A stretch of DNA of 64,000 bases from Schmidtea polychroa (Eukaryota), in NCBI GenBank assembly GCA_044892525.1, contig CM097888.1, positions 56,358,001-56,422,000 on the forward strand, in the 5' to 3' direction. A program made the position numbers and the translations under genes. This document shows, piece by piece, positions 9,485-44,077 of the stretch. The notes below the pieces were generated by a model. It made no database searches. It was not told the origin of the DNA and saw nothing but the letters and a program-made list of their open reading frames with translations. Every line of letters starts with the position of its first letter. Within the stretch, counting starts at the first letter, position 1.

Positions 9485-12400
9485 CGAGAGGACAAAAAGC
9501 GGTGGCACTACATATTTCAATGAGATATTTAAATCTAGACTGGATATTATTAACGAACAAATCGCTTCAAGATTTCGCAACGAATATTTCAAGAAATCTA
9601 AACTGAATAACGAATTGCGAATCCGTGGCATGTTTGAGGAGATGATAAATAAATCAAACTACTTTACAATATCACTTTTCGCTACCAAACATTATGTTTT
9701 GATACGGATTATTGCCCGATATATTTTCTAATATTATTTATATTTTTTTCTTTTTAAGGAAAAATCTCATTCTTTGTCTTCAATAGTTGTAAATAATTGT
9801 CTTTAAATGTCATTTTATATTTTATATTTACACATTTTCCATGGCCTGTCATTGAGAAAATTCTTCTTACAATTCATAAATAGACAATCAAATATTTTTG
9901 CCATCTCACTTCAATATCCACTTTTATATACGAAATAACTGGCTGTCCCATTTAACCGGTGTCCCAATTAAGCAGAATCAACTGTACATCAAATTTTTTT
10001 AATATTTAAATAAAATATATTTCGATGTTGAAAATTTGATACAGATTTTTTTAGATGGAAAGGCAGTTTGTATAAGTTGATTTGGGTAGATTTGATTTGC
10101 TATCTAGTTTTGTTTTACGCAATCAATTTCACCTATCGGTTTGCACTTGACCAAAAACAACGAAAGTAAAATGGATTTCATTTAAATAATTATTTTAATT
10201 GATAATCGAAATGAACAGAATGTTTGTGAAATTGATTCAATTTGCAGATGAAATGAAGGAAAGTATTCCTTTCTATTTCATTTTAGGATTCTTTGTAGCT
10301 GGAGTCATTGGAAGGTGGTTCAGAATATTTCTATTAATACCTTGGCTTCATCGACAAGCATTTATGTTTGAAGTAAACTATATTTTTTTTATAANNNNNN
10401 NNNNNNNNNNNNNNNNNNNNNNNNNNNNNNNNNNNNNNNNNNNNNNNNNNNNNNNNNNNNNNNNNNNNNNNNNNNNNNNNNNNNNNNNNNNNNNNNNNNN
10501 NNNNNNNNNNNNNNNNNNNNNNNNNNNNNNNNNNNNNNNNNNNNNNNNNNNNNNNNNNNNNNNNNNNNNNNNNNNNNNNNNNNNNNNNNNNNNNNNNNNN
10601 NNNNNNNNNNNNNNNNNNNNNNNNNNNNNNNNNNNNNNNNNNNNNNNNNNNNNNNNNNNNNNNNNNNNNNNNNNNNNNNNNNNNNNNNNNNATGAGTCGT
10701 ATTATTAAATAGAATGACCATCAAAAATAATTTTCCGTCATACTATTCCGGTAGTTATACTATTTAGTGCTTTCAAAAAAATGTTGGGTATATTGTAGTT
10801 GGTCGGTGATTATTAACTGTCAATTACTATTCTGACTCCGATCGTGTTATTTAATAACGACAATGACAAATCACTACGATTTTATTGATTATAACGATCT
10901 CAACCATACCAATTTGCAACACAGGTCACATGTTTCAAATGTTTATTACAATCCTCCAGGAAGAATAACAATAACAATCCTCTAAGAACACGACCGCTTG
11001 ACTAGTGCCGGTAATGGGAAATTCCCAAAATTGATCTGGTTGCTTTAAACTTGATTTGAGTTTCTCAACTACCACTGATTCACTAATTCAATTCGCAAGT
11101 TTTTTCCAACTGTTTCCTGATTCTTAACACTTTATTTTACTCTCTTTTCCATCTGATGGCACTTATTCATTCTTTATTTGCACTTGTTTTATTGGCATTC
11201 CATAATCTCTGACAGCTGTCGAGATATATGTATTTTTTACAATCCAGTTTCTCGGATTTCCCATACCTTTTCCCCTTTCTATTTCAAGTAGGCCGTCGAG
11301 ATAACAAGACAATCTAAATTTTGTTTTGCTTTCTGTGTCGCTTCTTTTGTACTTGTACTTAATAATTAAGAATGACCTTCCTTTATTTAATTGTCTGTTT
11401 TTATTGATTTTCTTCTGTTCCCTTCAACATCTCTCTTCTACTCTTGTTGTACTGAGTTCCAGAAGACTGCCCCATTCATTTATCATCATTTCCCCAATCA
11501 TTTTGCGTCTTTATTATTTTTATTTTGTAATTTAGGTATCCATAACAAAAATAATAGACGAAAATCTTTTATTCATCGACCAGATCTAGAACATCAGATT
11601 TGACAATATCACTATCTTGATTAACCATTAGCTGTCCATGATTTAAACTAAGACAGTTGACACGAACTATTTCACAGTAAACATCATGCTTTGAAATAAG
11701 TCAGTCTTCAAAATTAGTCGAAAATCATGCTGTACTAATTGAATTGAGTATATTTTTGGCAAAAAGAATACTCCAGGCCTCATCAATCCAAGAACTAACA
11801 ATTGAATGGCTTGACTATTTGAGGTTACCTGCTCTTGTGAACTATACTACCAGAGTTCTTCCAAATATTCATTGCATTGCAAATTTTATCTTTAAATTTT
11901 TTATAAATTCCAATTTCTCATTTTTAAACTATTTTATTCTATAAAACAGAAAAAACACACGTTTTAGTGTCTGTCTGTCACAAGAATTCCTCTTAAACGG
12001 TGTATCGTAGCGACATGGCATTTGCACATAGCATTATGACTGCCAAATCTGTCAATTGTAATATTTTCAACTTTAATTTTTTTCTATCTCAAAGTCAATG
12101 GATCAAATTTGACAGACAGGTGCTTCTCATATGGGTTGCTTTGTGTGGTAATGTCAAGAACAAAAGATCTCTCAGCATTGTTCATCATCGTCGATAATCA
12201 ATAAGGAACTAAAAATTGTATATAGCCAAATATTAAAACAAATTTGTATAAACAATATGAATAAAATTAATTATAATGAGTAAAAAATGAGTGTCAATAT
12301 AGCCCGAGCAAAGCTGGGTAATAAAGTTACTTAATTTAAATAATTGTTCACTTAGTATGTAGTCATAACCATTTAATACCACGCCACGAAAGTTATTGAA

Positions 12401-15400
12401 GAGGAGAACTTTTCTGTTGAGTTTAGTTCCTGAACCGGTAGAATCTTAACCTTATTATTACTAGGTTTATATACTTTTGTAAAACGCCACTATGTGACTT
12501 TAATACACATATTGAAAATACATGTAGTTATATTAGTAAAATTATATTTTAATAATCCGCATAAGGAGTATTATGTTATTAGACAAAAAAATATTTTAAC
12601 GAAAATATTATATTATACAAGTATCGTCGGCACATATTTTTTTCTGGTACGGTTTTATCAACCACTAGAATATGGGAAGTATTTTCCAAAATTTCGTTCA
12701 CTGTATCAACGGTATTTTTAGGTAAATGTTTTACACTTCTACGTTTTATATTTGGTATTACTAATTCTTGCACTAAATTCTTCAAAAATAATTTTCGTCG
12801 CGAATTTATTTATAAAAATTTATATAAATTTTTCCAAATAATTTCTGCAGCTATACCACATACGTCAACAAGATTATAAAACTGTGCAATCGGCCATCTT
12901 CTGGTTTTACGTTTTATCGAAAAAGCATGCCACTTTTGGTCTAACGTATCAACCCCACCTTTTGTACTATTATAATATAAGTTTACTTCAGACTTATTTT
13001 TATTTGTGCTGTCTACTACAGAATTGTGGTGCATTGCGGATAGCAAGACAACAGCACGATTTTTTTTGGTACGTAACTGACTAGCGTCATATTTTTTGTG
13101 AAACCAAAAATGTTACTTTCAACTTCTCTTCTTCTATTTGGAAGGAAATTTGGTGGTATACATCTTTTGTTCTTTCGTAAAGTGCCTACACATGTAAGGC
13201 CCTTGGATAATAAGCAATTTGCAAGTTCGTAACTTGTAAAATAATTATCGAATGTGATATTTCTATTTGATCGCTCAAATGGTTCACACAATTGTTCAAT
13301 GACGGTTCTACCCAAATTTACTGCTCGACCAGCTTGTCCTTGGCCAAGGTATGGTATGCCAAATAAAGGATAACTAGTCTTTACATAACCACCAAATCTT
13401 CATTCGTATTTATCTGGTTTGGAGGGGATATACTGTCGGAATTGAACTCTGCGTCTAAACGGGACCAACTGCTCATCGATTGTTGAATTTTTTATTATTT
13501 TTAGATATTTTTGCGAAGAATTTATAAATGATAGAATACATTGTTATCATTTGGAAACATCAATGTATTTGTGTATAATATCTAGTAATTAAAATAAAAT
13601 GTGATTCAAAGTCACAACCTAGTGTTAATAGGATTAATATGTTGAAATTTGACAGTAACTATATCGAATTTGCTAAGAAAATTTTTTCTTTATGGGATAT
13701 TTTGTAGTAATTTTAGTAATTATTATAGTAATTTTAAGCTTTAATTTTAAATGAAAATTCATATCTCTACTTTCATGTTCACTATTTTAAAGTAAGAAAT
13801 GCAGAATCCAGGACATTCGGGAACAAAATAAGCCAATACGCAAGACTTGTTTTCAACACTGTCCTCCGAAATTGGGGACGAATGATTATCTTATTATATA
13901 TCATATTTTTATTTATTTACCATTCTTTTTTAATTGTTTCGTTGTCGTAAATAAATGTCCCAAAATATATATGTTTTATGGTTTGTGTATATTTCTGTAT
14001 TTTTGTTTATATTTAATTTAATTTTCTATTCATAAAATATTTTTTTAAAGTTTTAAAGTGTTTGTAATAAATTTCTTTTATGAATAAAAATTATTTTTAA
14101 ATCTATAAAATTATTTTTTAATTTTTATTTTATCTAAATCTGTTTTATTTTAATTAAAAAATATCTATTCAGAGTACTATAAATGGAAATGAATGGGAAA
14201 AATCTCTTCGACTACGAAGGACATTGTTGAGATATTTAAACCTAGCTTGGATACTTCATATGCGAATTATTAGCGAACAAATCGCCTCAAGATTTCGCAA
14301 CGACGATTTCAAAAAATCTAAACGGAATCATGAATTTCGAATTCGTGACATGTTTGAGGAGATGAATCAGGATCAGAGTATATAAATTCATTATTCATAA
14401 AATATTGGGATCTGTATTAGGTTAACGGGAAAGGTTTCGTCAGATATATGATAATAATTTTAAAGACATTATTCTAAAACAACAAAACATTTATTCCTAA
14501 ATGTAGTTACCATTAACATCATCACTTCTTTCATGCGTTCTGCAAACTCATTCATTCACATTAGAAGTGATTATTATCACTGAATTATGGCTTTCTCAAC
14601 AACTCTAAATGACCGAGTTTCTTGTGGAAGTGTGCTAGAAAGATTTCAACAGAGCAGGTTGAATGAAGTAATATATATATATATATATAAAGAACATATA
14701 AGAACATTCTTCAAATTTCACCACTAATTTCTTTTCAATTGACATTGTATTTATTAAAAAGATTGACTATGAATCAGTAAATATATCGATGTTTTTTGAT
14801 ATTCACAAATTTTCAGCACTGCCTTTTTAATATACATATATTACATGCAAATAAAGAAACTCCAACTTTTAAAATGGTGTATGCTTGTAATATATATCAG
14901 GCACTAAATAACTTTAATAAAAACCGATTATATATATATAAGTTTGTTAGTAACTACATACGCGCAGAATTCAATAAAATTTATTAATCTTTATAAAGTG
15001 AAATAAACACTCAAAATACACCTAGTTAATACATTTTCAATTTTGGATTTTTGGGTTGGATGATTTTCATCATCAAAGCCTCACAAGTAATAGGTTTGCA
15101 ACCGTTTTTGAAACTCTTAGATAAAATTTTAAAATTGTAATGGGTGTAATGCCACATACATTAGAGAGACTGCTCGCCATCTCTGTATACGAGTTCGAGA
15201 GAAGACATTATTGAGCCTAAGATATACAAGTTAAAATTAGACATTTCAAATAAATAAAAAAGAGTTTTGATATATCAAGAATTACATTGGCTTTTCAAGG
15301 TCGTTTATGGTTATTAGGAGGTTCATCCTGTAAAACATTAAAATCAGTTTTTGTTTCCATAAATTTTATTTCAGTAAATATCAATATCAAATTATATCTT

Positions 15401-18400
15401 CTTTAAACTTTCTTATTTAAACAAATTTTCTACGAAGATATTTTTAATTAAAATATCTTCTTATTTCTTTTTTAAAAATTAATCTAAAATTTAATTTTTA
15501 AAATTTTCAATTTAAAAATTTCTTCATCATAAAACTTCCTCATATCCCCCTTCTTAAAAAATTTTTAAGTTTATCCACATTTCTTTCGATCTTTTTTCCA
15601 TCTTCATTTCTTAAGATGTATCGTCTGTCATGCACTTTCTCTATCACTTTGTACGGACCTTCATACCTGTCCTGGCCTTTGTGGCGTGTTTCTACTTTTA
15701 ATAATACTTCTTCTCCTACATTGAATTTTCTCCTTGTTTGTTCTTCTAGTTCTACCTTTATCGGTATTTCTTTGGACCCGTACCATTTTTCCCTGCTAAT
15801 CTTTTTTCCAAAAACTATCTCTGCCGGGCTTTTCCCTGTCGTTTTTTGTTTGGTTGCATTTAAAGTGAATTCGACTTCTGGTAATATCTCTGCCCAATCC
15901 GTCTTCTTTCTATCCTGTAAAGTAGCATTTATCAAATCCCGTATTGTCCTGAATTGTCTTTCTATCTGACCGTTTGTTTGGTGATGGTATGGACTCGAAA
16001 AACATAATTTAATATCTAGCATCTTTGTGAATTCTCTCATCATTCCTGATTCAAACGCCTTTCCGCAATCAACTCTTATCTCCTTAGGGCATCCAAATCT
16101 TAAAATCCACTTTTCTAAAATCGTTTTCTTTATTGTTTCTTCGTCTTGTTTTGTTATCGCTGTCAAGACTTGATACTTACTATACTGATCTATTATGCCC
16201 AATATATACTTCTTACGTCCTTTTGTTTCTGTCAACGGTCCACATATATCCACGAATATAATTTCGAACATTTCCTTCGAATCTTGTTTTTTTACTGGTT
16301 CTTTCGTTGTTATTGTTAAAGCCTTGTTTTTTTGACAAATCTCACAACTTCGAACAATTTCCTGAATCTGACTCCACAGGTGTTTTCCAACATATCTATC
16401 TTTCATATAATCGGCTATCTTCTCGACTCCAGCATGACACAATAGTCTATGTATTTCCTTTATTGTTTCTTGTAACTCATTTTCAGGTATCATCGTTTTC
16501 TTTCGTACTTCTTCTACCATTCCATGTTGGATGTTGCTTCTTCCTTCTTCTCTGATCGAGTCTAGTAATCTGGTTTTTATCTTTCCTTTCTTAGCTTCTT
16601 CGTGGGTCATTTGAAATTGAACACACGTGTCACATTTAGTTCTCGACACCATGTCTGCATTTTGGTGATTAATACCCTTTCTGTATTCTACTCTTATATC
16701 GAAACTGCTAAAATAATTGATCCATGTTTGGAATTGTGAAGTAATCGGCTTCTTGGTTGTCATCATAAACGTGATTGCCTTGTGGTGTGTCCTGAGCGTG
16801 AATCTTCTTCCGTAGAGATAGTGCTTAAAATGAATGCAAAAATAATATACCGCCAATAGTTCCTTTCTTGTAATACAATATCCTTTCTCGTGGCTCGTCA
16901 TCGAGTGTGATCCATACGCAATTACTCTTTCCTTTCCATCTTTATCTCTTTGTGAAAGTACTGCTCCAATGATATCGAAACTAGCGTCGGTATCTAAAAT
17001 GAACTCCTTTTTCAGATCCGGAAAACATAAGATTGGTGCCGTCGTGAGTGCTAATTTCAATCCCTCAAACACGCTATTCGTTCCTTCACTCCATTCTAAT
17101 ATTTTGTTACTTGGTCCACTACATAATTGTTCTAACATCCTTGCCTTCTTTGCATAATCACCGATGAATCTTCTATAATAATTGCAAATACCTAAAAAGC
17201 TTCGGAGTTTCTTTACGCAATTAGGCTTCCCAAAATTCTGTATGGCCTGAATTTTAGATGGATCTGTCTGTACTCCTTCCTTGCTGATTATGTGTCCTAA
17301 GAATCTGATTTCTTCCTTTATTATTTGGCATTTTTCTGGATTAATCCTTAGGCCTGCTTCCTCAATCGCCTTTAACACTTCTCCGAGTATTGTATAGTGT
17401 TTCTCTTTACTGCTTGAATAAATCAAGATGTCGTCCAAATACACCATTACTCTCTTTATTTTGCCTAATACTTTTGTCATCATTTCTTGGAACGTACCTG
17501 GTGCTGCTGCAATTCCAAACGGCATTCTGTTGAAACAATATTGTCCGTTCTTTGTTGAGAAAGCTGTTTTCTCCTGTGATTCTTCTTCTAGTTCCACTTG
17601 GTAATATGCATTACCTAGATCGATTGAGCTAAAAAAGAGGGATCCTCCTAACAAATCCAACATCTCGTCTATGTTTGGCATTGGAAATGCCTGCCTCTCT
17701 GTTACCGCGTTCAGCTGTCTAAAGTCCAAGCATATTCTAATATCCTTTTTCTCTTTTTTCCATACAAATATTAGCGGTGTATTCCATGGAGAGTTATATT
17801 TCCGTATAATTCCATTTTTGTACAAATTTTGTATTGCTTCTTCAATTTTTGATTCCAATTTTAGTGGTTGGCGATATGGTTTTATGTTTATCGGCTCACC
17901 TCTTGTAACTATCTTGTGTTTTACCAAATGTGTGCGACCCACATCCCATTTATCTGCCATAAACACGTTTCCACTGTTTGTTATAATTTCCTTTAATTTG
18001 CTATCTTCATTGATCTTTAACTGTTCCAACGCTCGTATCAATCGTTCTTCATCCTTTATTTTTCTGCCAAATTTTGCTTCAATGTTACAAATATAGTTCT
18101 TGTCTTTTTCACTAGCCTCGATATCTTTAACTTTTAACAGTCTAAATCCAAATGTTTCTTGTAATTCGATTCCTCCAATCAGGTCTGGTGTTACTTTCTC
18201 CGCCACAATGAATATAACTTCATTCAAAACATTTCCAATGGTTACTTGCACCTTCGTTTTTCCTATTGTCTCGATCGTACTCTCGTTTGCGCATCGTAAC
18301 TTATCGTCACTTTTCGTGAATTGTTGTCCTCGTAGCTTGTTAAAACAGTTCACACTCATTACATTGATTCTTGCACCAGTGTCTAATAAACAGTCGAAAT

Positions 18401-21400
18401 TTTCCCCATTCATCCTTACTGTTATACTAGGCCTTCCTTGCATTCTGTTATACAAAATTTCAACAACTTGCTCCGTTTCAATGGTTCCAATTCTTTCCAC
18501 TTCCTCTTCAAACATTTCTCTCTTTAGGAACCTGTATACTTTCTCGCTTACCCTTCCAACATTCTCCCACTTTTCTGCCCCTTGAGGATATCCCATCAAA
18601 TTTTCTGTTAGAATATGGCTCCAACCAACTCCTCTACTGGTGGAGCTCTGTTGTTTGGGTACGTCTTCCTAAAATTATCTTCATTTGTCTCTACACACGA
18701 TTCCCTTTCTTCTTCTTCCTCGATACCATTTATCCGACTGTATCTGTTTCCCGTGAATCTTTGTCTCTCCGTCGCTCTCCCGTACCTCATCTTTGTATAA
18801 CACTCCTCGGATCTATGACCATTTCTGCTACATCTTTCACAACGTATTTCCTGACACAATCTTCTTATATGACCTTCTTTCCCACACCCAAAACATCTTG
18901 GAGCTTTTTTATCTGTACAGTTTCTACTTATATGTCCGCTTCTATGACATGTCCAGCATTCTATTTTACCTTCTATTGGACAATCAATTTTCGTGTGTCC
19001 TATTTTGTGGCATAACCAGCATTCTGGCATTTCTCTTCGGATACTTTCTTCTCTCTGTTCTTTCTTCTTGTATTGCACTCTTCCCTGTGGTTCCTGATAG
19101 ACCACTCTGGCGTAACTTTTCATACTGTTTATCTGATCTCTTTGCTTGTCTACTTTGTCCTTCAGAGTTAGTGTTTCCATTATTTCTTCTGTGCTTTTTA
19201 TCTTCCGTAGTATCACTTCTTTCTCAACTTCTTTATTCTCCGCGCATACTATTAACATCCTTGCTGTTAATTTCTCTTTGGTAAATTCTTTATTTTCAAA
19301 CAACCTATCAACAAGGTCCTCCACCTTTTTAAAATACGTTTCTATTTCTTCACCCTTCCGCTTGTAATTCAACAAGTTTTGTAGATCCTTTAAAACATCT
19401 CTTTTTCGCGATCGAATGCCAATCGCAACTTAGCCTGGAATCCTTCGGCTTTTTTCAGTGTTTTGGCGTATACTTCCAGGAGATCCTCATCAATCATGCA
19501 AGATGTTAATCTTTCCTGATCTTTCTTCTGCGTGATTCCCTTGGCGTCGAAATAAATTTCGCATCTTTTAATGAACTTTTCCAAGTCGTCACCTTGGCAG
19601 AATATCTTTGGTAGCAATCTTTCGGTGATTGCGTCCGTGTTTACCGCTGCCACCATATTAGGAGGTTCATCCTGTAAAACATTAAAATCAGTTTTTGTTT
19701 CCATAAATTTTATTTCAGTAAATATCAATATCAAATTATATCTTCTTTAAACTTTCTTATTTAAACAAATTTTCTACGAAGATATTTTTAATTAAAATAT
19801 CTTCTTATTTCTTTTTTAAAAATTAATCTAAAATTTAATTTTTAAAATTTTCAATTTAAAAATTTCTTCATCATAAAACTTCCTCATAATGGTCATAAAA
19901 TATTACCATTGCCTTCTATTCAATATTCTTCATACTCCAATACTGCATTTAATTGCATTAGATTTGAAGGTTCTGGATGGAATACATTCAAGTAAAGATA
20001 GGACAACAACTGCTAGAAAAGATATCAATCATAAAGACTTTGGGGAGTGAATTAGAAATTTAGAAAACCATATTTATTTAACTAAGAAATGTTACATAAT
20101 AATTGTTGAGGATACCTAAATGATAAATAGCATAATAAATAAGTAAATGACCTGGGGAAAGATCGTCATGACAAACGGGACGAAAATATGGGTAAAAGTA
20201 AAAAAAGTAAAAAAAAAGTAAAAAAATATGGGTAAAAGCCGTACCTTGACAGCTTGTCAAAGATTGCGGAATTGTTTGGAGAAGGCGGCCTAACAATAAA
20301 GGAAAAGTGAAAGTATATCTCGACATCAGTCAGAGATAAACTGGGAAAAGTCAGGAAATGCAGGAAAAAGAAAAGTGGAAAACATTTCATTATCTCTAAT
20401 GCCACAAATAAAACAAGCTATACACAGAAAAACTGGTGGACACAAAATCTAAACAAAAAGTGAGACAGAATTGAGACAAAACCGAGACGACTAATTAGAC
20501 AGAGTCGTACGAAACGTTATTGGAAAACTATTTGTGAAGAATAATTGTTGGAAAAGATTTAGAGAAAAGAATTTGTTGAAAAATTAAACGAAAAGAAGTT
20601 ATTTGACTATTTGAAAAGTTGTGAAGAAGGTCAAAGAAAACAACCAGCTCAAAGTCCCAGTTGATAAACCAATCAGTAGTTAGTCATTTTTCAATCCTGT
20701 GTTGAACACGAGTCCTATTCTTCACTAGATGGGTTCCAATAAGCATTTTTAAAGTCAACGAGCGGAGTGTTGAATTGATTGTCTGTGTAAAGTGAAAATT
20801 ATTCGTGATTATCAATAAAAATTTCTGTTGTCAAGTGTTATTTGTGAATCAATCAAAGACACGCTTGGAGTCAGAATAAGAATTTTAATTTTATCACCAA
20901 CCCAATAACCCAACATAATAATTTTCCATGTATTTCTAAATAAAAAAACGTTATAATTATTCAAAAAATGTTGAATTTGTAATTAAACTGACTTTCAAGA
21001 ACTTTATACGAACTATATGATATTGTATGACTTTTCTATTTTGAATTATACCCACAACCGTGGAGATACATTCGATGTAGCTTTTGTTAGTCAATATTTT
21101 CATTTAAATTTTGCTTAATATTTTAAAATGTTTTATTACAGTGATTCAGAAAACCTACGGTAAAATAATAACGGATGCTGAAATTCGAGTATTTGAGTCT
21201 TTTGTTGTTGGGAATTCAGAATATGTTCCAGAATATTGGATCCCTATTCAATGGGCATCAAGAGTAATTCAGAAATCATATACTAATAATTATCTTTCGG
21301 GTCCTGCATGCAAAGATGATTTAATAAAGGTGTTCAAATTTATTTTGTTATATATATTGACATTTTTTTAATTGAATGTCCAAATGTGTCTTATCAAATG

Positions 21401-22630
21401 CAATGTGATTGGTTAAGAAATTGACCAAATGCGATTGGCTAAACAATGATACAAATGTTCCTAAAATAAATGAATATTAGAAATAATATTTAATCTCTAA
21501 TACGGAGTGTTAGACGCAATTAAATTCAAATCTTCTTCAAGCATTTATTTTTTATAACAACTTCAAAATTGTCCCGTTTACTAGCGTATTTAAACACCGA
21601 GGCGTGATAATTATTAATATTAATGTAATTACTGGTCATACATTTAATTGATTTAATTTAATATAATTTAATATAATATGATATAATTTAATATAGAATT
21701 TAAATATAAAAATTTAACAGAAATAATTATTTCTACTAACTGATCTCACTTCTACCATTTAACCATAATAATTTTATATAGAGATTTACTAACTCCTTAC
21801 ACGCAGGATTGCATTACTGCTTTAATAGTTGACTCCATGTTATTTCTTCAAGATCTTTTACATAGTTTGACAATTATTTATTCTTTTCTTATCCTAGGTT
21901 ATAGAAAATCCTTTACAAATTGGGACATATTTTTATCTTATATTGGCTTTAAAGGAATTTAGAATTTATTAAAAACTGGTCAGTAGATTGATGTGAGCGC
22001 AATGGCTCAAACTGAAATAACATTTTGATGGAAGTACCTATGATTATCAATATAGATTTATTTGTACAACAGAGCGTGAATCGAACTACAAATTAACATT
22101 TTGAATGTTTTTGTGGACTGTCAATGGTCGCAACTAAACAAGGGCTCAAAGTTGTCAAAGTCATGAAAATTTCGCAAAATTTTAAAAAATTTGTCGACGA
22201 CTCCCTAAAAATTGAGTACCAAAAGTACTATGAAAAAATATGTTTAGTGATTTGGATTCTGAAAATTATNNNNNNNNNNNNNNNNNNNNNNNNNNNNNNN
22301 NNNNNNNNNNNNNNNNNNNNNNNNNNNNNNNNNNNNNNNNNNNNNNNNNNNNNNNNNNNNNNNNNNNNNNNNNNNNNNNNNNNNNNNNNNNNNNNNNNNN
22401 NNNNNNNNNAAAGCCTTGAGCTCATCGTGAAATTGGACCACTTGATTTAAAATTTGATTCTATTGACCTATCGAATTACTCTAAAACATTGCTGCATTTA
22501 GGAAACCATTCAAAATTGACAATGATTTGTAATCTTCTTAAAATATTATTCGGTGGTTTGGATAAACTTAGTTTTGAAACTTTTATTGAATTAAATTTTA
22601 ATGGTATTATTATTTTTTTTATTAGTTATG

Positions 22631-22703
<73 letters not shown>

Positions 22704-25700
22704 GCATAGTATTGATGAGTGCCAAAAGCTCGAAAATAGTCTACAAGTTAAAAATGCTAAAGGTTTACGAATGCACTTGTAAACAGTTTCTTTGTATGAC
22801 GGTGTCTCCAGAGGCGAATATGATTTTTCATACGCCATGTTTACAAGTTTGCAAATATTTTTTTCTGTGATTTAGCTAATTTGCAAGTGATGTGATTTCC
22901 AGAATAGCAGGTAAAGAATGCAATAGAGTTGAATCAGCAATATTGTATACTTACCTGGCGCGAAGAGAAATCTTCGCGTCTCCTGCATAGTACTGATGAG
23001 AGCCAAAAGCTCAAAACTAGTCCACTATTGGGATTTGCACTGGGTATCACAGTGAGCGCCGTAAATTTTATAAAAGCCATAAATTTGATAAAATTGAAAA
23101 AAAATTGAAAAATTATAAACAAAACAAAATTAAAGAAAATCGAAAAAAAAATTAGTTTAATATATAAATTAAAATTTTAAATATATGCAAAAATAATTAT
23201 TATTTTTTGACATTTTTGTTTATAAGTTATAAAACTTTAAAAAATTGAGAAGAAAATTTTATAATACATTCATACCTCGCTTTACGGCCTAGATACGTTC
23301 CAAGAAAGTTGGCCGCAAAGCGAAACGCCGCATAATGAATCAAATATTTTGATACAATTCCATATACTTTCCATATACAATTCCATATACAATTCACACT
23401 TTTTTTGGCCGTATAACGAAACATTTTAGGCCGTAAATCGAAAAAGGGCCGTAATTAAAGTAGGCCGTTATAGCGAAAAGCCGTATAAAGAGCAGCCGTA
23501 TAGCGAGGTATGAGTGTAATCTAGTTATCCACATTTACGAATTAATTTTGAAATAAAAGGTGAAAAGAATATATTTGAAAGAATATATGTTTGAAAGAAA
23601 TTTATTTTTTTCTTAAATTTTTTGTTTAAAGAAAACATTAGACTGTTGAATTTTTGTAAGCTAATGTTAATTTAATATTATTTTTTTATTGTTTTTTTTG
23701 TTCGTTTGTTATCCTAGTCATTGAAATAAAATGATGTAATATATAATATTAATATATGTATATGCAATAATGTGTAATATTATTAATAAACATAATATAT
23801 TTTTGTAAAAATTAGTTTTTTAGGGGCGCATTATAGTTTATAGCACAGGGGCGACAAATTTCTAAAGACGCCTTTATATATATGTTGAGGTCTGTAAATT
23901 AAAATTAAAAATTCAAATAAAATTTAGAATAATAATTCAAATGGAAAGTAAGCGAGGAAAAAAGGCAAATAAAAGCGGGATCGTGCACAGAATCAATAGT
24001 AAAGGAAAGTGTGATAGAAACAGTATTAGAAAATGCCAAAAGCAATTACGAAAGGCGAGAATCCGGAAATCCGAGAAAAATCAATAAAGGGAAAAATCAT
24101 CGAAATCGAATGGGAAAAACGGGACAGGTATAGATTAGCTAATGGTCAACAAGATGATGGTTAGGGATTTATCAGAAAAGGGTTAGGAAGGGTCGAAAAA
24201 CATTCAAATGTACGAAAACAGAAAACGTTAATTAATTAATTAATTGGCTAATGGAAAACCCGAGTTAATGGGAAACCCGAGCCAATGGAGAACCCGAGAG
24301 ATAAAGGAAACCCGAGCTGGGTAAACAAGAAGAAAGGCAAACAAAAGGAAGATTTGGGCCCATTAGCTTGACACAATGATTAATGGGAAAAGAGTAAGGA
24401 GAAGATAGCGCGCGTAGGAAGACCGGTAGGGCCATTAATTATCTGGATTCGTTGGACCATTATGGATGACAACCGAAGCAAACACGTAGGAGAAAATGTC
24501 AAACGAAAGATTGGCTCGACAATAACCATTTGTCATCCTGATTTCGAGGAGTATATAAGCAAAGGGAAAATCAGAGAAAATCGGCATTTTGCCTCAGGTA
24601 GGGTAAGAAGAATCGAGAATAGTCGAGAGGTAAAAAACGAATTTAGGGAAGTAGGGAAAAGAAGAAATAGAATTAAGAATACGGAAAGGCAGAAAGGGAT
24701 CAAACCAAAGAGAAACCGAGGAAAAAGAGAGTCGAGAGAACTAAAGGAACAAAAGGTGAATATTGTTTGTTGGCAAAGCATCAACGCCGAGCGGAGAATC
24801 GTATAAAACTTTGATTGGTAATTGTAGCGTGATAATAAATTGTGAACTTGTTGTTTCAATATACGTTGGGTCGCTCATTGTTTTAATTTAAAGAACACCA
24901 GGAGTCAGAGAGAACCGANNNNNNNNNNNNNNNNNNNNNNNNNNNNNNNNNNNNNNNNNNNNNNNNNNNNNNNNNNNNNNNNNNNNNNNNNNNNNNNNNN
25001 NNNNNNNNNNNNNNNNNNNNNNNNNNNNNNNNNNNNNNNNNNNNNNNNNNNNNNNNNNNNNNNNNNNNNNNNNNNNNNNNNNNNNNNNNNACAAAAATAA
25101 CAATAATAGTAATAAATTTAAATAAAGTTAATAAATAAATAAAAATATTTACATTAAAGTAGGCGTAATAAATATCTTTCTTTACATTGTTGGATAAAAT
25201 TAATAAAAATAAAAATTGGATAATTAAAAGCATTATGTATGTCAACGGCTCCTACATTGCAGGAGAATGTCATTTATCATCAGTTAAATTTCGACCATAA
25301 ATCAATGTTGCCCTATTTAACACAGATTTTTGACACTTCTTTCTTCAATGGGATTTCGACCGATTTGAATCTTGAGAGTAATTTTTTATACAATATACCC
25401 AGTTCCAAGACCATATATATTACGACACACGAAGTATATTTATATATTTCAAAGAGATTAAAAAACTGTAATGTTCGTTCTATAATTAGGAATTAGATAA
25501 AGTCCGAAACAATATGCAAGAACTACACGTGTTCAGTCAAATCACAATACCTTTAGTTTATACTCAAGTTAGTTTATGTTTATGATGAAGCTTTCTTTAG
25601 AAATAAATATTATTTTATTCTTTATAGGTTGTCATCATTGCTGTGTATAGCTTTTTCCTATGTGAATTGATGGCTGCTCAGTTAATTTCACCATCAGAAA

Positions 25701-44040: not shown

Positions 44041-44077
44041 ATTCACTTGAAAAAGGCAGTGCCGAAAATTCGTGAAT
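44041..44077 (+). ncRNA. Minimal type I hammerhead ribozyme motif with U3-A8 variant core (family B, best copy)
   Basis: ATTCAC-TTGAAAA-A-GGC-AGT-GCC-GAAA-AT-TC-GTGAAT: perfect 6-bp stem I, 3-bp stem II, GAAA, palindromic AATT stem III and a UC cleavage site. Confidence 0.65.

What the first reader, a model, noticed from the sequence alone, without database searches (positions are those of the whole stretch)
22702..23028. Tandem pair of hammerhead ribozymes 281 nt apart bracketing a hairpin-rich spacer: a retrozyme-like or circRNA-generating unit in a bestrophin intron
Seen: two copies of a 46-nt motif carry different lesions, so their consensus is a complete type I hammerhead: ATAGTA-CTGATGA-GAGC-CAAAA-GCTC-GAAA-CTAG-TC-TACTAT. 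Predicted cleavage sites at 22741 and 23022 delimit a 281-nt unit. The spacer folds by eye into successive hairpins (TACAAGT/ACTTGTA; GGCG-ATATGA/TCATA-CGCC; TTGCAAAT/ATTTGCAA; CAGGTAA...TTACCTG; CGCGAAGA-GAAA-TCTTCGCG). Known: Penelope-like elements and small non-autonomous animal retrozymes carry minimal type I hammerheads whose palindromic stem III (here ACTAGT) forms only between two tandem copies, releasing monomers that circularise. Inference: this is a decayed member of a possibly uncatalogued family; it lies on the host sense strand, so active copies could cut pre-mRNA.
Basis: partly seen in the sequence, partly recalled or inferred. Interest (0 to 1): 0.8.

Follow-up and report, generated by a model that had tools for sequence, protein, structure and literature searches.

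The report
Dead hammerhead-ribozyme retroelement copy in intron
Two broken copies of a self-cleaving hammerhead ribozyme motif sit 281 bases apart inside an intron of a bestrophin gene; they are a decayed, fragmentary insertion of a very abundant small retroelement whose other copies mostly keep an intact ribozyme, which is a known kind of element and not a new one.

Summary
A 43-nt motif occurs twice on the + strand (22702-22744, 22983-25), 88% alike, 281 nt apart, and none is expected by chance. Each copy has core lesions. Copy 1 has U at C3, a stem II mismatch and A at 15.2. Copy 2 has A at G12 and C at 1.1. Public-run contigs laid on the stretch show that 22745-23051 belongs to a highly abundant repeat family, with summed depth 10^4-10^5 times that of the unique flank. 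Its architecture is the canonical metazoan type I form that needs a dimer. The spacer folds well on the + strand only (z -3.5 against -1.7). The unit lies in a bestrophin intron on the sense strand. Corrections: only 43 nt are duplicated, and the family's edges here (22745, 23051) are not the cleavage sites. The locus therefore reads as a 5'-truncated unit joined to the last 43 nt of another, next to a (TA)32 tract, as in Penelope-type partial tandems. No cleavage or circle is expected here. The scan has flagged this family repeatedly on other DNA of this genome. It is a new member of a known kind.

The parts
22635..22698 (.). (TA)32 microsatellite directly 5' of the insertion; likely target tract
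   Evidence: PLEs show an insertion bias to microsatellites, including (TA)n (PMC8557442).
22702..22744 (+). Hammerhead copy 1: a 43-nt piece equal to the 3' part of the unit. Stem I 5' strand 22706-22711, core 22712-22718, stem II/loop 22719-22731, GAAA 22732-22735, predicted cleavage after 22741. Lesions at 22712, 22720 and 22736.
   Evidence: The duplication ends 3 nt past the predicted cleavage site.
22745..22907 (+). Body of the 5'-truncated unit. It is abundant in organism A and nearly absent from the organism B run.
   Evidence: summed depth is 3.0e5-4.1e5 in X2 against about 10 in the unique flank, and 4-6.5 in X12. Loose ends before 22745 carry a shared, different sequence.
22908..22957 (+). 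Hairpin whose 3' arm (22947-22959, ATACTTACCTGGC) equals, from memory, the first 13 nt of U1 snRNA. Its 5' arm (CAGGTAAAGAAT) is 5'-splice-site-like.
   Evidence: The family majority letter at 22917 is T. The Rfam U1 model is silent at E<=10.
22959..22978 (+). 8-bp hairpin capped by a GAAA tetraloop
22978..23034 (+). Hammerhead copy 2 with extended stem I. Outer helix 22978-22982/23030-23034, inner helix 22987-22992/23023-23028, core 22993-22999, stem II 23000-23012, predicted cleavage after 23022. Lesions at 23013 and 23023.
   Evidence: (HH9 alignment). In one search the majority letters G at 23013 and T at 23023 hold 85-99.8% of depth in four runs.
23035..23051 (+). Last letters shared with the family. 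Other copies continue differently behind 23051.
   Evidence: 84 (X2) and 122 (X1) contigs have loose ends behind 23051, with a shared consensus (agreement 0.66-0.68).
21108..21368 (+). Reading frame holding the upstream bestrophin exon (context)
   Evidence: Pfam PF01062, profile 146-212, E 2.4e-4.
25490..25582 (+). Reading frame holding the downstream bestrophin exon (context)
   Evidence: PF01062, profile 213-239, E 3.1e-4. This is contiguous with the previous exon in the profile.

Best explanation
This is a dead, fragmentary insertion of an abundant, gene-less, hammerhead-bearing retroelement family, of the non-LTR retrozyme / Penelope-like pLTR-derived kind. A 5'-truncated unit (22745 to about 23025-23051) is joined head-to-tail to the last 43 nt of another unit (22702-22744). 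The join lies within 3 nt of the ribozyme's cleavage site, and the insertion abuts a (TA)32 tract. Inferred mechanism for the family: multimeric transcripts are cut by two neighbouring hammerheads that pair through the palindromic ACUAGU to form helix III. The unit-length RNA, linear or ligated into a circle, is copied by a Penelope-type reverse transcriptase, giving 5'-truncated and partial-tandem copies. At this locus both ribozymes carry core lesions, so the copy is expected to be an inert passenger of the bestrophin intron.
For: Shown: the duplicated 43-nt motif and its lesions. Family abundance: summed contig depth is 3e5-9.6e5 over 22746-23081 against about 10 in the unique flank in DNA run X2, and more than 100 distinct contigs cover the ribozyme in each of X2 and X1. 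The family majority restores both core lesions of copy 2: G at 23013 holds 96/85/99.8/96% and T at 23023 holds 99.9/98/99.5/96% of depth in X2/X1/X7/X12. No other majority difference is listed inside the ribozyme. The 22914-23051 module is also abundant in a run of a second species; a 222-nt X12 contig matches 22867-23051 with 9 differences. Folding is strand-specific. GC is 37%. The only ORFs of 90 aa or more between 19734 and 26532 are masked or low-complexity frames, and the one tested has no Pfam hit. From the literature: canonical metazoan type I architecture and dimer dependence (PMC4209133, PMC7229834); PLE 5' truncation, partial tandems, 30-40-bp tails and microsatellite targets (PMC8557442); retrozymes as pLTR derivatives (bioRxiv 10.64898/2026.07.22.740005). 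Weak: the RNA-to-DNA depth ratio of the unit (X7/X2 about 0.013) is roughly ten times that of neighbouring repeats at 23166-23249 and 23418-23501 (about 0.0013), which hints at transcription of the family.
Against: No full-length family member could be read. The family's unit length, its true ends and any link to a Penelope RT ORF therefore remain inferred. No target-site duplication is visible, and the 3' flank is other repeated DNA, not (TA)n. The family edge at 23051 is not at the cleavage site, so the 3' side needs a later break or a third truncated unit. Contig depth is not a copy number. DNA carry-over in the RNA libraries cannot be excluded. Cleavage has not been shown for any copy.
Confidence: 0.75

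Rival explanations
1. A genuine dimeric retrozyme locus. On this reading the 281-nt cleavage-to-cleavage stretch was itself a complete short-variant monomer, once transcribed with the host pre-mRNA, cut at both hammerheads and circularised, and since decayed.
For: The spacing of 281 nt lies within the 170-400 nt range of animal retrozyme RNAs (PMC7229834). The + strand folds compactly. Both hammerheads are similarly diverged from the family majority (3 and 2 of 43), as expected for one insertion event.
Against: The sequence after HHR2 does not restart the unit (p 0.5-0.8). Other copies have a different shared sequence in front of 22745. No back-join is among the joints listed (15 of 112 shown, and contigs would hardly show one).
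Confidence: 0.15
2. A host-exapted intronic ribozyme or RNA module that regulates bestrophin pre-mRNA, by analogy with the conserved intronic HH9 hammerheads of amniotes.
For: The unit is in sense orientation in an intron. Copy 2 has a weak HH9-like alignment including the stem I internal loop.
Against: Both cores carry lesions at catalytic positions (C3, G12). The sequence belongs to a highly abundant dispersed family. There is no sign of locus-specific conservation.
Confidence: 0.03
3. A chance resemblance or a local duplication with no relation to ribozymes.
For: Rfam gathering thresholds report nothing.
Against: Shuffles gave zero expected matches. The family majority is an exact hammerhead core with all conserved positions, in two species.
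Confidence: 0.02

Closest known systems
Non-LTR retrozymes of animals (Cervera and de la Pena 2020, PMC7229834)
   Same: Type I hammerhead with a very short helix III and palindromic loop. Gene-less, with low GC. The 281-nt spacing falls within the reported 150-450 bp repeat size. Predicted highly self-paired RNA. Very high copy number. Family contigs are present in RNA libraries.
   Different: There is no clean tandem array here: only 43 nt are repeated. The family's unit length is unknown, and circles were not shown. The unit carries a 13-nt U1-5'-end-like stretch in a hairpin next to the ribozyme, which neither of the two hammerhead papers read (PMC4209133 in the parts read, PMC7229834) mentions and a paper search did not turn up.
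Hammerheads in the pseudo-LTRs of Penelope-like elements (Cervera and de la Pena 2014, PMC4209133; Craig et al. 2021, PMC8557442)
   Same: 5' truncation. A head-to-tail partial copy of 43 nt, comparable to a minimal pLTR or the 30-40-bp tail. Position next to a (TA)n tract. Dimer-type helix III.
   Different: No RT/GIY-YIG ORF was seen nearby: the ORF list for the 64-kb window shows none by eye, and only a few ORFs were scanned against Pfam. Helix sizes (I 6 bp, II 4 bp) are those of canonical metazoan hammerheads, not of the min-HHRs described for many PLEs (helix II 7-8 bp, helix I 4-5 bp).
Amphibian satellite / axolotl HHR_Amex1 repeats (PMC7229834)
   Same: Helix III is a single pair capped by a palindromic tetraloop, so efficient cleavage needs two neighbouring copies.
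   Different: Unrelated sequence and a different host group. Those repeats form long tandem arrays of 330-350 bp.
Rfam Hammerhead_HH9 (RF02275)
   Same: Best Rfam alignment. It shares the core, a 4-bp stem II with an A-rich loop, and a stem I with an internal loop.
   Different: The score of 17.6 bits is far below the gathering score of 52. HH9 has a proper helix III hairpin and is a conserved single-copy intronic motif.

Membership tests
Hammerhead ribozyme, type I | Conserved core C3-U4-G5-A6-N7-G8-A9, G12-A13-A14, A15.1-U16.1, H17 | tested here: not met
   Not met by either window copy: copy 1 has U3 and A15.2, and copy 2 has A12. It is met by the family majority: 23013 G and 23023 T, with no other majority difference listed in the motif.
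Hammerhead ribozyme, type I | Three helices around the core, with helix I open-ended | tested here: met
   Read from the sequence and the HH9 alignment. Helix I is ATAGTA/(T)ACTAT plus an outer 5-bp helix. Helix II is GAGC/GCTC with loop CAAAA. Helix III forms only as A-CUAG-U.
Hammerhead ribozyme, type I | Reaches the Rfam gathering score | tested here: not met
   No hit at gathering. HH9 scores 17.6 bits against 52. This is expected for dimer-type motifs that lack a helix III hairpin and carry lesions.
Hammerhead ribozyme, type I | Self-cleavage | not testable with these tools
   This needs transcription assays of natural intact copies.
Non-LTR retrozyme | Short head-to-tail tandem repeats (150-450 bp), each with a type I hammerhead | tested here: inconclusive
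   Two hammerheads lie 281 nt apart, but only 43 nt are repeated and the downstream sequence does not restart the unit. The family's arrangement elsewhere could not be read.
Non-LTR retrozyme | No coding capacity, and GC below 50% | tested here: met
   GC is 37%. The only ORF of 90 aa or more overlapping the unit (22489-22782) runs through the (TA)n tract, and no protein family is evident within 2 kb. LTR, PBS and PPT were not searched for specifically.
Non-LTR retrozyme | Expressed as linear and circular RNA of unit length | tested here: inconclusive
   Family contigs occur in RNA-labelled runs X7 and X12, with an RNA/DNA depth ratio about ten times that of neighbouring repeats. Contigs cannot show circles, and DNA carry-over is not excluded.
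Non-LTR retrozyme | Predicted stable, highly self-paired RNA | tested here: met
   z -3.46 on the + strand, with 0 of 200 shuffles as stable, against z -1.71 on the - strand.
Penelope-like element (insertion footprint) | RT plus GIY-YIG ORF between pLTRs | tested here: not met
   By eye the ORF list shows no Penelope-type ORF near the unit or elsewhere in the window. Only two transposon-like ORFs were scanned against Pfam, giving a piggyBac-type transposase fragment and no match. The long pol ORF looks Ty3/gypsy-like by its motifs and was not scanned. The locus is therefore at most a non-autonomous or truncated derivative.
Penelope-like element (insertion footprint) | 5' truncation, partial tandem or tail, microsatellite target | tested here: met
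   Loose ends before 22745 share another sequence, which implies truncation here. A 43-nt head-to-tail piece is present. A (TA)32 tract abuts the 5' end. These features are as described in PMC8557442.

The most novel reading that the evidence does not exclude
The 138-nt module conserved in two species (22914-23051) comprises a hairpin carrying an exact 13-nt copy of the U1 snRNA 5' end, a GAAA-capped hairpin and a dimer-type hammerhead. It may be the working core of an active, highly expressed circRNA-producing retrozyme family. The U1-like arm would then have a function of its own, for example masking a splice-donor-like stretch of the element or engaging the splicing machinery. That would be a feature not found in the hammerhead retroelement papers read here.
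Probability: 0.1. Interest if true: 0.65.

Novelty: new member of a known kind. Interest (0 to 1): 0.3.

Why it matters
The locus itself matters little: it is a fossil copy in an intron. The family behind it is very abundant, keeps an intact hammerhead in most copies, is shared with a sister species and is represented in RNA libraries. That makes this genome a good place to test the proposed retrozyme life cycle of cleavage, circularisation and Penelope-type reverse transcription. The head-to-tail join within 3 nt of the predicted cleavage site is a small piece of genomic evidence consistent with ribozyme-defined RNA ends serving as templates. The decay of a sense-strand intronic copy fits the reported depletion of retrozymes from introns. 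That depletion was shown in Xenopus only (bioRxiv 10.64898/2026.07.22.740005), and a single locus proves nothing.

Tried and rejected
- Rfam at gathering thresholds over the whole window found nothing.
- The weak E-value hits to miRNA models lie in the (TA)n tract, and the weak U4 hit lies on the minus strand. I treat all of these as chance.
- A sensitive blastn of 22702-23051 against the 64-kb window found no further copy.
- A relaxed core scan found no other credible hammerhead.
- Exact-pattern scans found no match, so no outside copy could be fetched. These were the consensus core in metagenome contigs, the U1-like/GAAA hairpin in metagenome contigs and the core in bacterial/archaeal genomes.
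- Two intronless ORFs of the window were looked up to identify the source organism.
- I tested whether the sequence after HHR1 is a diverged copy of the sequence after HHR2 plus the loose-end consensus. It is not significant, so I dropped the plain-tandem reading.
- The loose-end consensus behind 23051 does not recur downstream in the window. A simple interruption of the unit by a later insertion is therefore not supported.
- A paper search for a U1-like stretch linked to hammerhead retroelements found nothing relevant.

Full report
**Observation.** The + strand carries the same 43-nt motif at 22702-22744 and 22983-23025. The copies are 38/43 identical and 281 nt apart.
It matched nowhere in 100 dinucleotide shuffles of the window.
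- By standard hammerhead numbering, copy 1 has U at C3 (22712), a broken pair in stem II (22720) and A at 15.2 (22736). After the cleavage site it reads TACAAG.
- Copy 2 has A at G12 (23013) and C at 1.1 (23023).
- Rfam reports nothing at gathering thresholds. In E-value mode copy 2 aligns end to end with Hammerhead_HH9 at 17.6 bits, E 0.54. The alignment includes an outer stem I helix (22978-22982 with 23030-23034) beyond a small internal loop.

**The spacer.**
- The 281-nt stretch 22742-23022 folds at -75.7 kcal/mol on the + strand, z -3.46, with none of 200 shuffles as stable. The complementary strand gives z -1.71.
- The strongest part is 22900-22982 (z -7.17). It holds a bulged hairpin followed by an 8-bp stem with a GAAA loop.
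TTGCAAAT/ATTTGCAA does not.

**Family evidence.** I laid Logan contigs of four public runs on 22410-24918 at 85% likeness. The runs were X2 (DNA), X1 (kind unknown), X7 (RNA) and X12 (RNA, second species).
- The unique intron flank 22410-22577 has depth about 10 in X2. The bins over 22746-23081 sum to 3.0e5-9.6e5.
- More than 100 distinct contigs cover the ribozyme in each of X2 and X1. The tool warns that summed depth is not a copy number, but the contrast shows a very abundant repeat.
- At 23013, G holds 96, 85, 99.8 and 96% of depth in the four runs. At 23023, T holds 99.9, 98, 99.5 and 96%.
- No other majority difference is listed inside the motif.
- In X12 only 22914-23081 is abundant (about 2,000 against 4-6.5 upstream). 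One 222-nt contig matches 22867-23051 with 9 differences. The hairpins-plus-hammerhead module is thus shared with a related species, while the body is not.

**Edges.**
- Contigs break off before 22745. Their loose ends share a different sequence (agreement 0.68-0.74; in X7 they run a median of 161 nt).
- Contigs also break off behind 23051: 84 in X2 and 122 in X1, with a shared consensus at agreement 0.66-0.68.
- Other copies therefore continue differently on both sides, and the window copy is a fragment of a longer unit.
- The sequence after HHR1 is not homologous to the sequence after HHR2 joined to that loose-end consensus (p 0.5-0.8).
- The loose-end consensus does not recur in the window.
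- The locus is therefore not one and a bit clean monomers. It is the last 43 nt of one unit joined, 3 nt past the cleavage site, to a 5'-truncated unit that carries its own hammerhead.
- A (TA)32 tract abuts the 5' end (22635-22698). No target-site duplication is visible.

**Reading.**
- These features match published descriptions of Penelope-like insertions: strong 5' truncation, partial head-to-tail tandems forming pseudo-LTRs, 30-40-bp tails, microsatellite targets and hammerheads near the 3' end (PMC8557442, PMC4209133).
[quoted passage not shown] A 2026 preprint derives retrozymes from PLE pseudo-LTRs (10.64898/2026.07.22.740005).
- The helix sizes (I 6 bp, II 4 bp, III one or two pairs with a palindromic CUAG loop) are those called canonical for metazoan type I hammerheads. 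Such motifs cleave efficiently only as dimers (PMC4209133, PMC7229834).
- GC of the unit is 37%.
- The ORF list shows no Penelope-type ORF near the unit or elsewhere in the window. Only a few ORFs were scanned against Pfam.
- The mechanism of dimer cleavage of multimeric RNA, ligation and reverse transcription by a Penelope-type enzyme is inferred from that literature. Nothing here shows cleavage.
- A weak hint of transcription: the X7/X2 depth ratio is about 0.013 for the unit and about 0.0013 for the repeats at 23166-23249 and 23418-23501.

**Gene context.** Frames at 10199-10393, 21108-21368 and 25490-25582 on the + strand match Pfam Bestrophin at profile positions 58-111, 146-212 and 213-239. 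The unit therefore lies in the intron between the last two, in sense orientation. With both cores damaged, no cutting of the pre-mRNA is expected at this locus.

**U1-like stretch.**
- 22947-22959 reads ATACTTACCTGGC. From memory, this is identical to the first 13 nt of U1 snRNA.
- It pairs with CAGGTAAAGAAT at 22908-22919. The family majority has T at 22917, which gives an 11-bp stem with one bulged A.
- The partner arm is only an imperfect splice-donor consensus.
- Nothing else is U1-like: the Rfam U1 model is silent at E<=10.
- Earlier scan notes describe the same module at many loci of this genome. One follow-up concluded that it is a retroelement fragment. I agree for this locus and keep a functional role of the arm as the low-probability novel case.

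**Verdict.** This is a decayed member of a known kind of element, and the scan has found the same family before on other DNA of this genome.

Noticed in passing
window 23838-24918: A second, even more abundant repeat. Summed depth reaches 1.1e6 in X2 and 3.9e6 in X1. It is strongly represented in the organism B RNA run, with poly(A) loose ends at 24088, 24482, 24563 and 24726. It contains three 17-nt tandem units at 24249-24299. Its 114-aa ORF has no Pfam match. It is possibly a polyadenylated SINE/LINE-type family.
   Followed up: partly
window 23265-23520: A MITE-like element about 256 bp long. Its terminal inverted repeats (23260-23288 / 23495-23523) are 86% complementary over 29 nt, and its DNA fold has z -3.76. 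Both arms are abundant in the DNA runs. GCCGTA(A/T)A motifs repeat inside it and upstream of it.
   Followed up: partly
window 22696-22704: ATAGTACTG, just before copy 1, repeats the first 9 nt of the hammerhead (stem I 5' strand plus CTG) seen at 22987-22995. It may be a microhomology footprint of a template jump, or (TA)n-derived chance.
   Followed up: no
window 15540-19734 (-): A retrotransposon that looks Ty3/gypsy-like by its motifs, with an uninterrupted 1019-aa pol ORF and gag-like ORFs. It lies in the preceding bestrophin intron, antisense to the gene. It was not scanned against Pfam.
   Followed up: no
window 13016-13315 (-): A piggyBac-type transposase fragment (Pfam DDE_Tnp_1_7, E 1.2e-15).
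   Followed up: partly
window 22979: In the organism B run nearly all depth reads C instead of T (2652 of 2682). The position lies in the outer stem I helix, opposite A23033. I did not examine whether a compensating change exists.
   Followed up: no
window 44041-44077: Another scan note on this window (s1-225466) reports an ultra-minimal hammerhead candidate with a U3-A8 core. The sequence read is unrelated to the family studied here.
   Followed up: no
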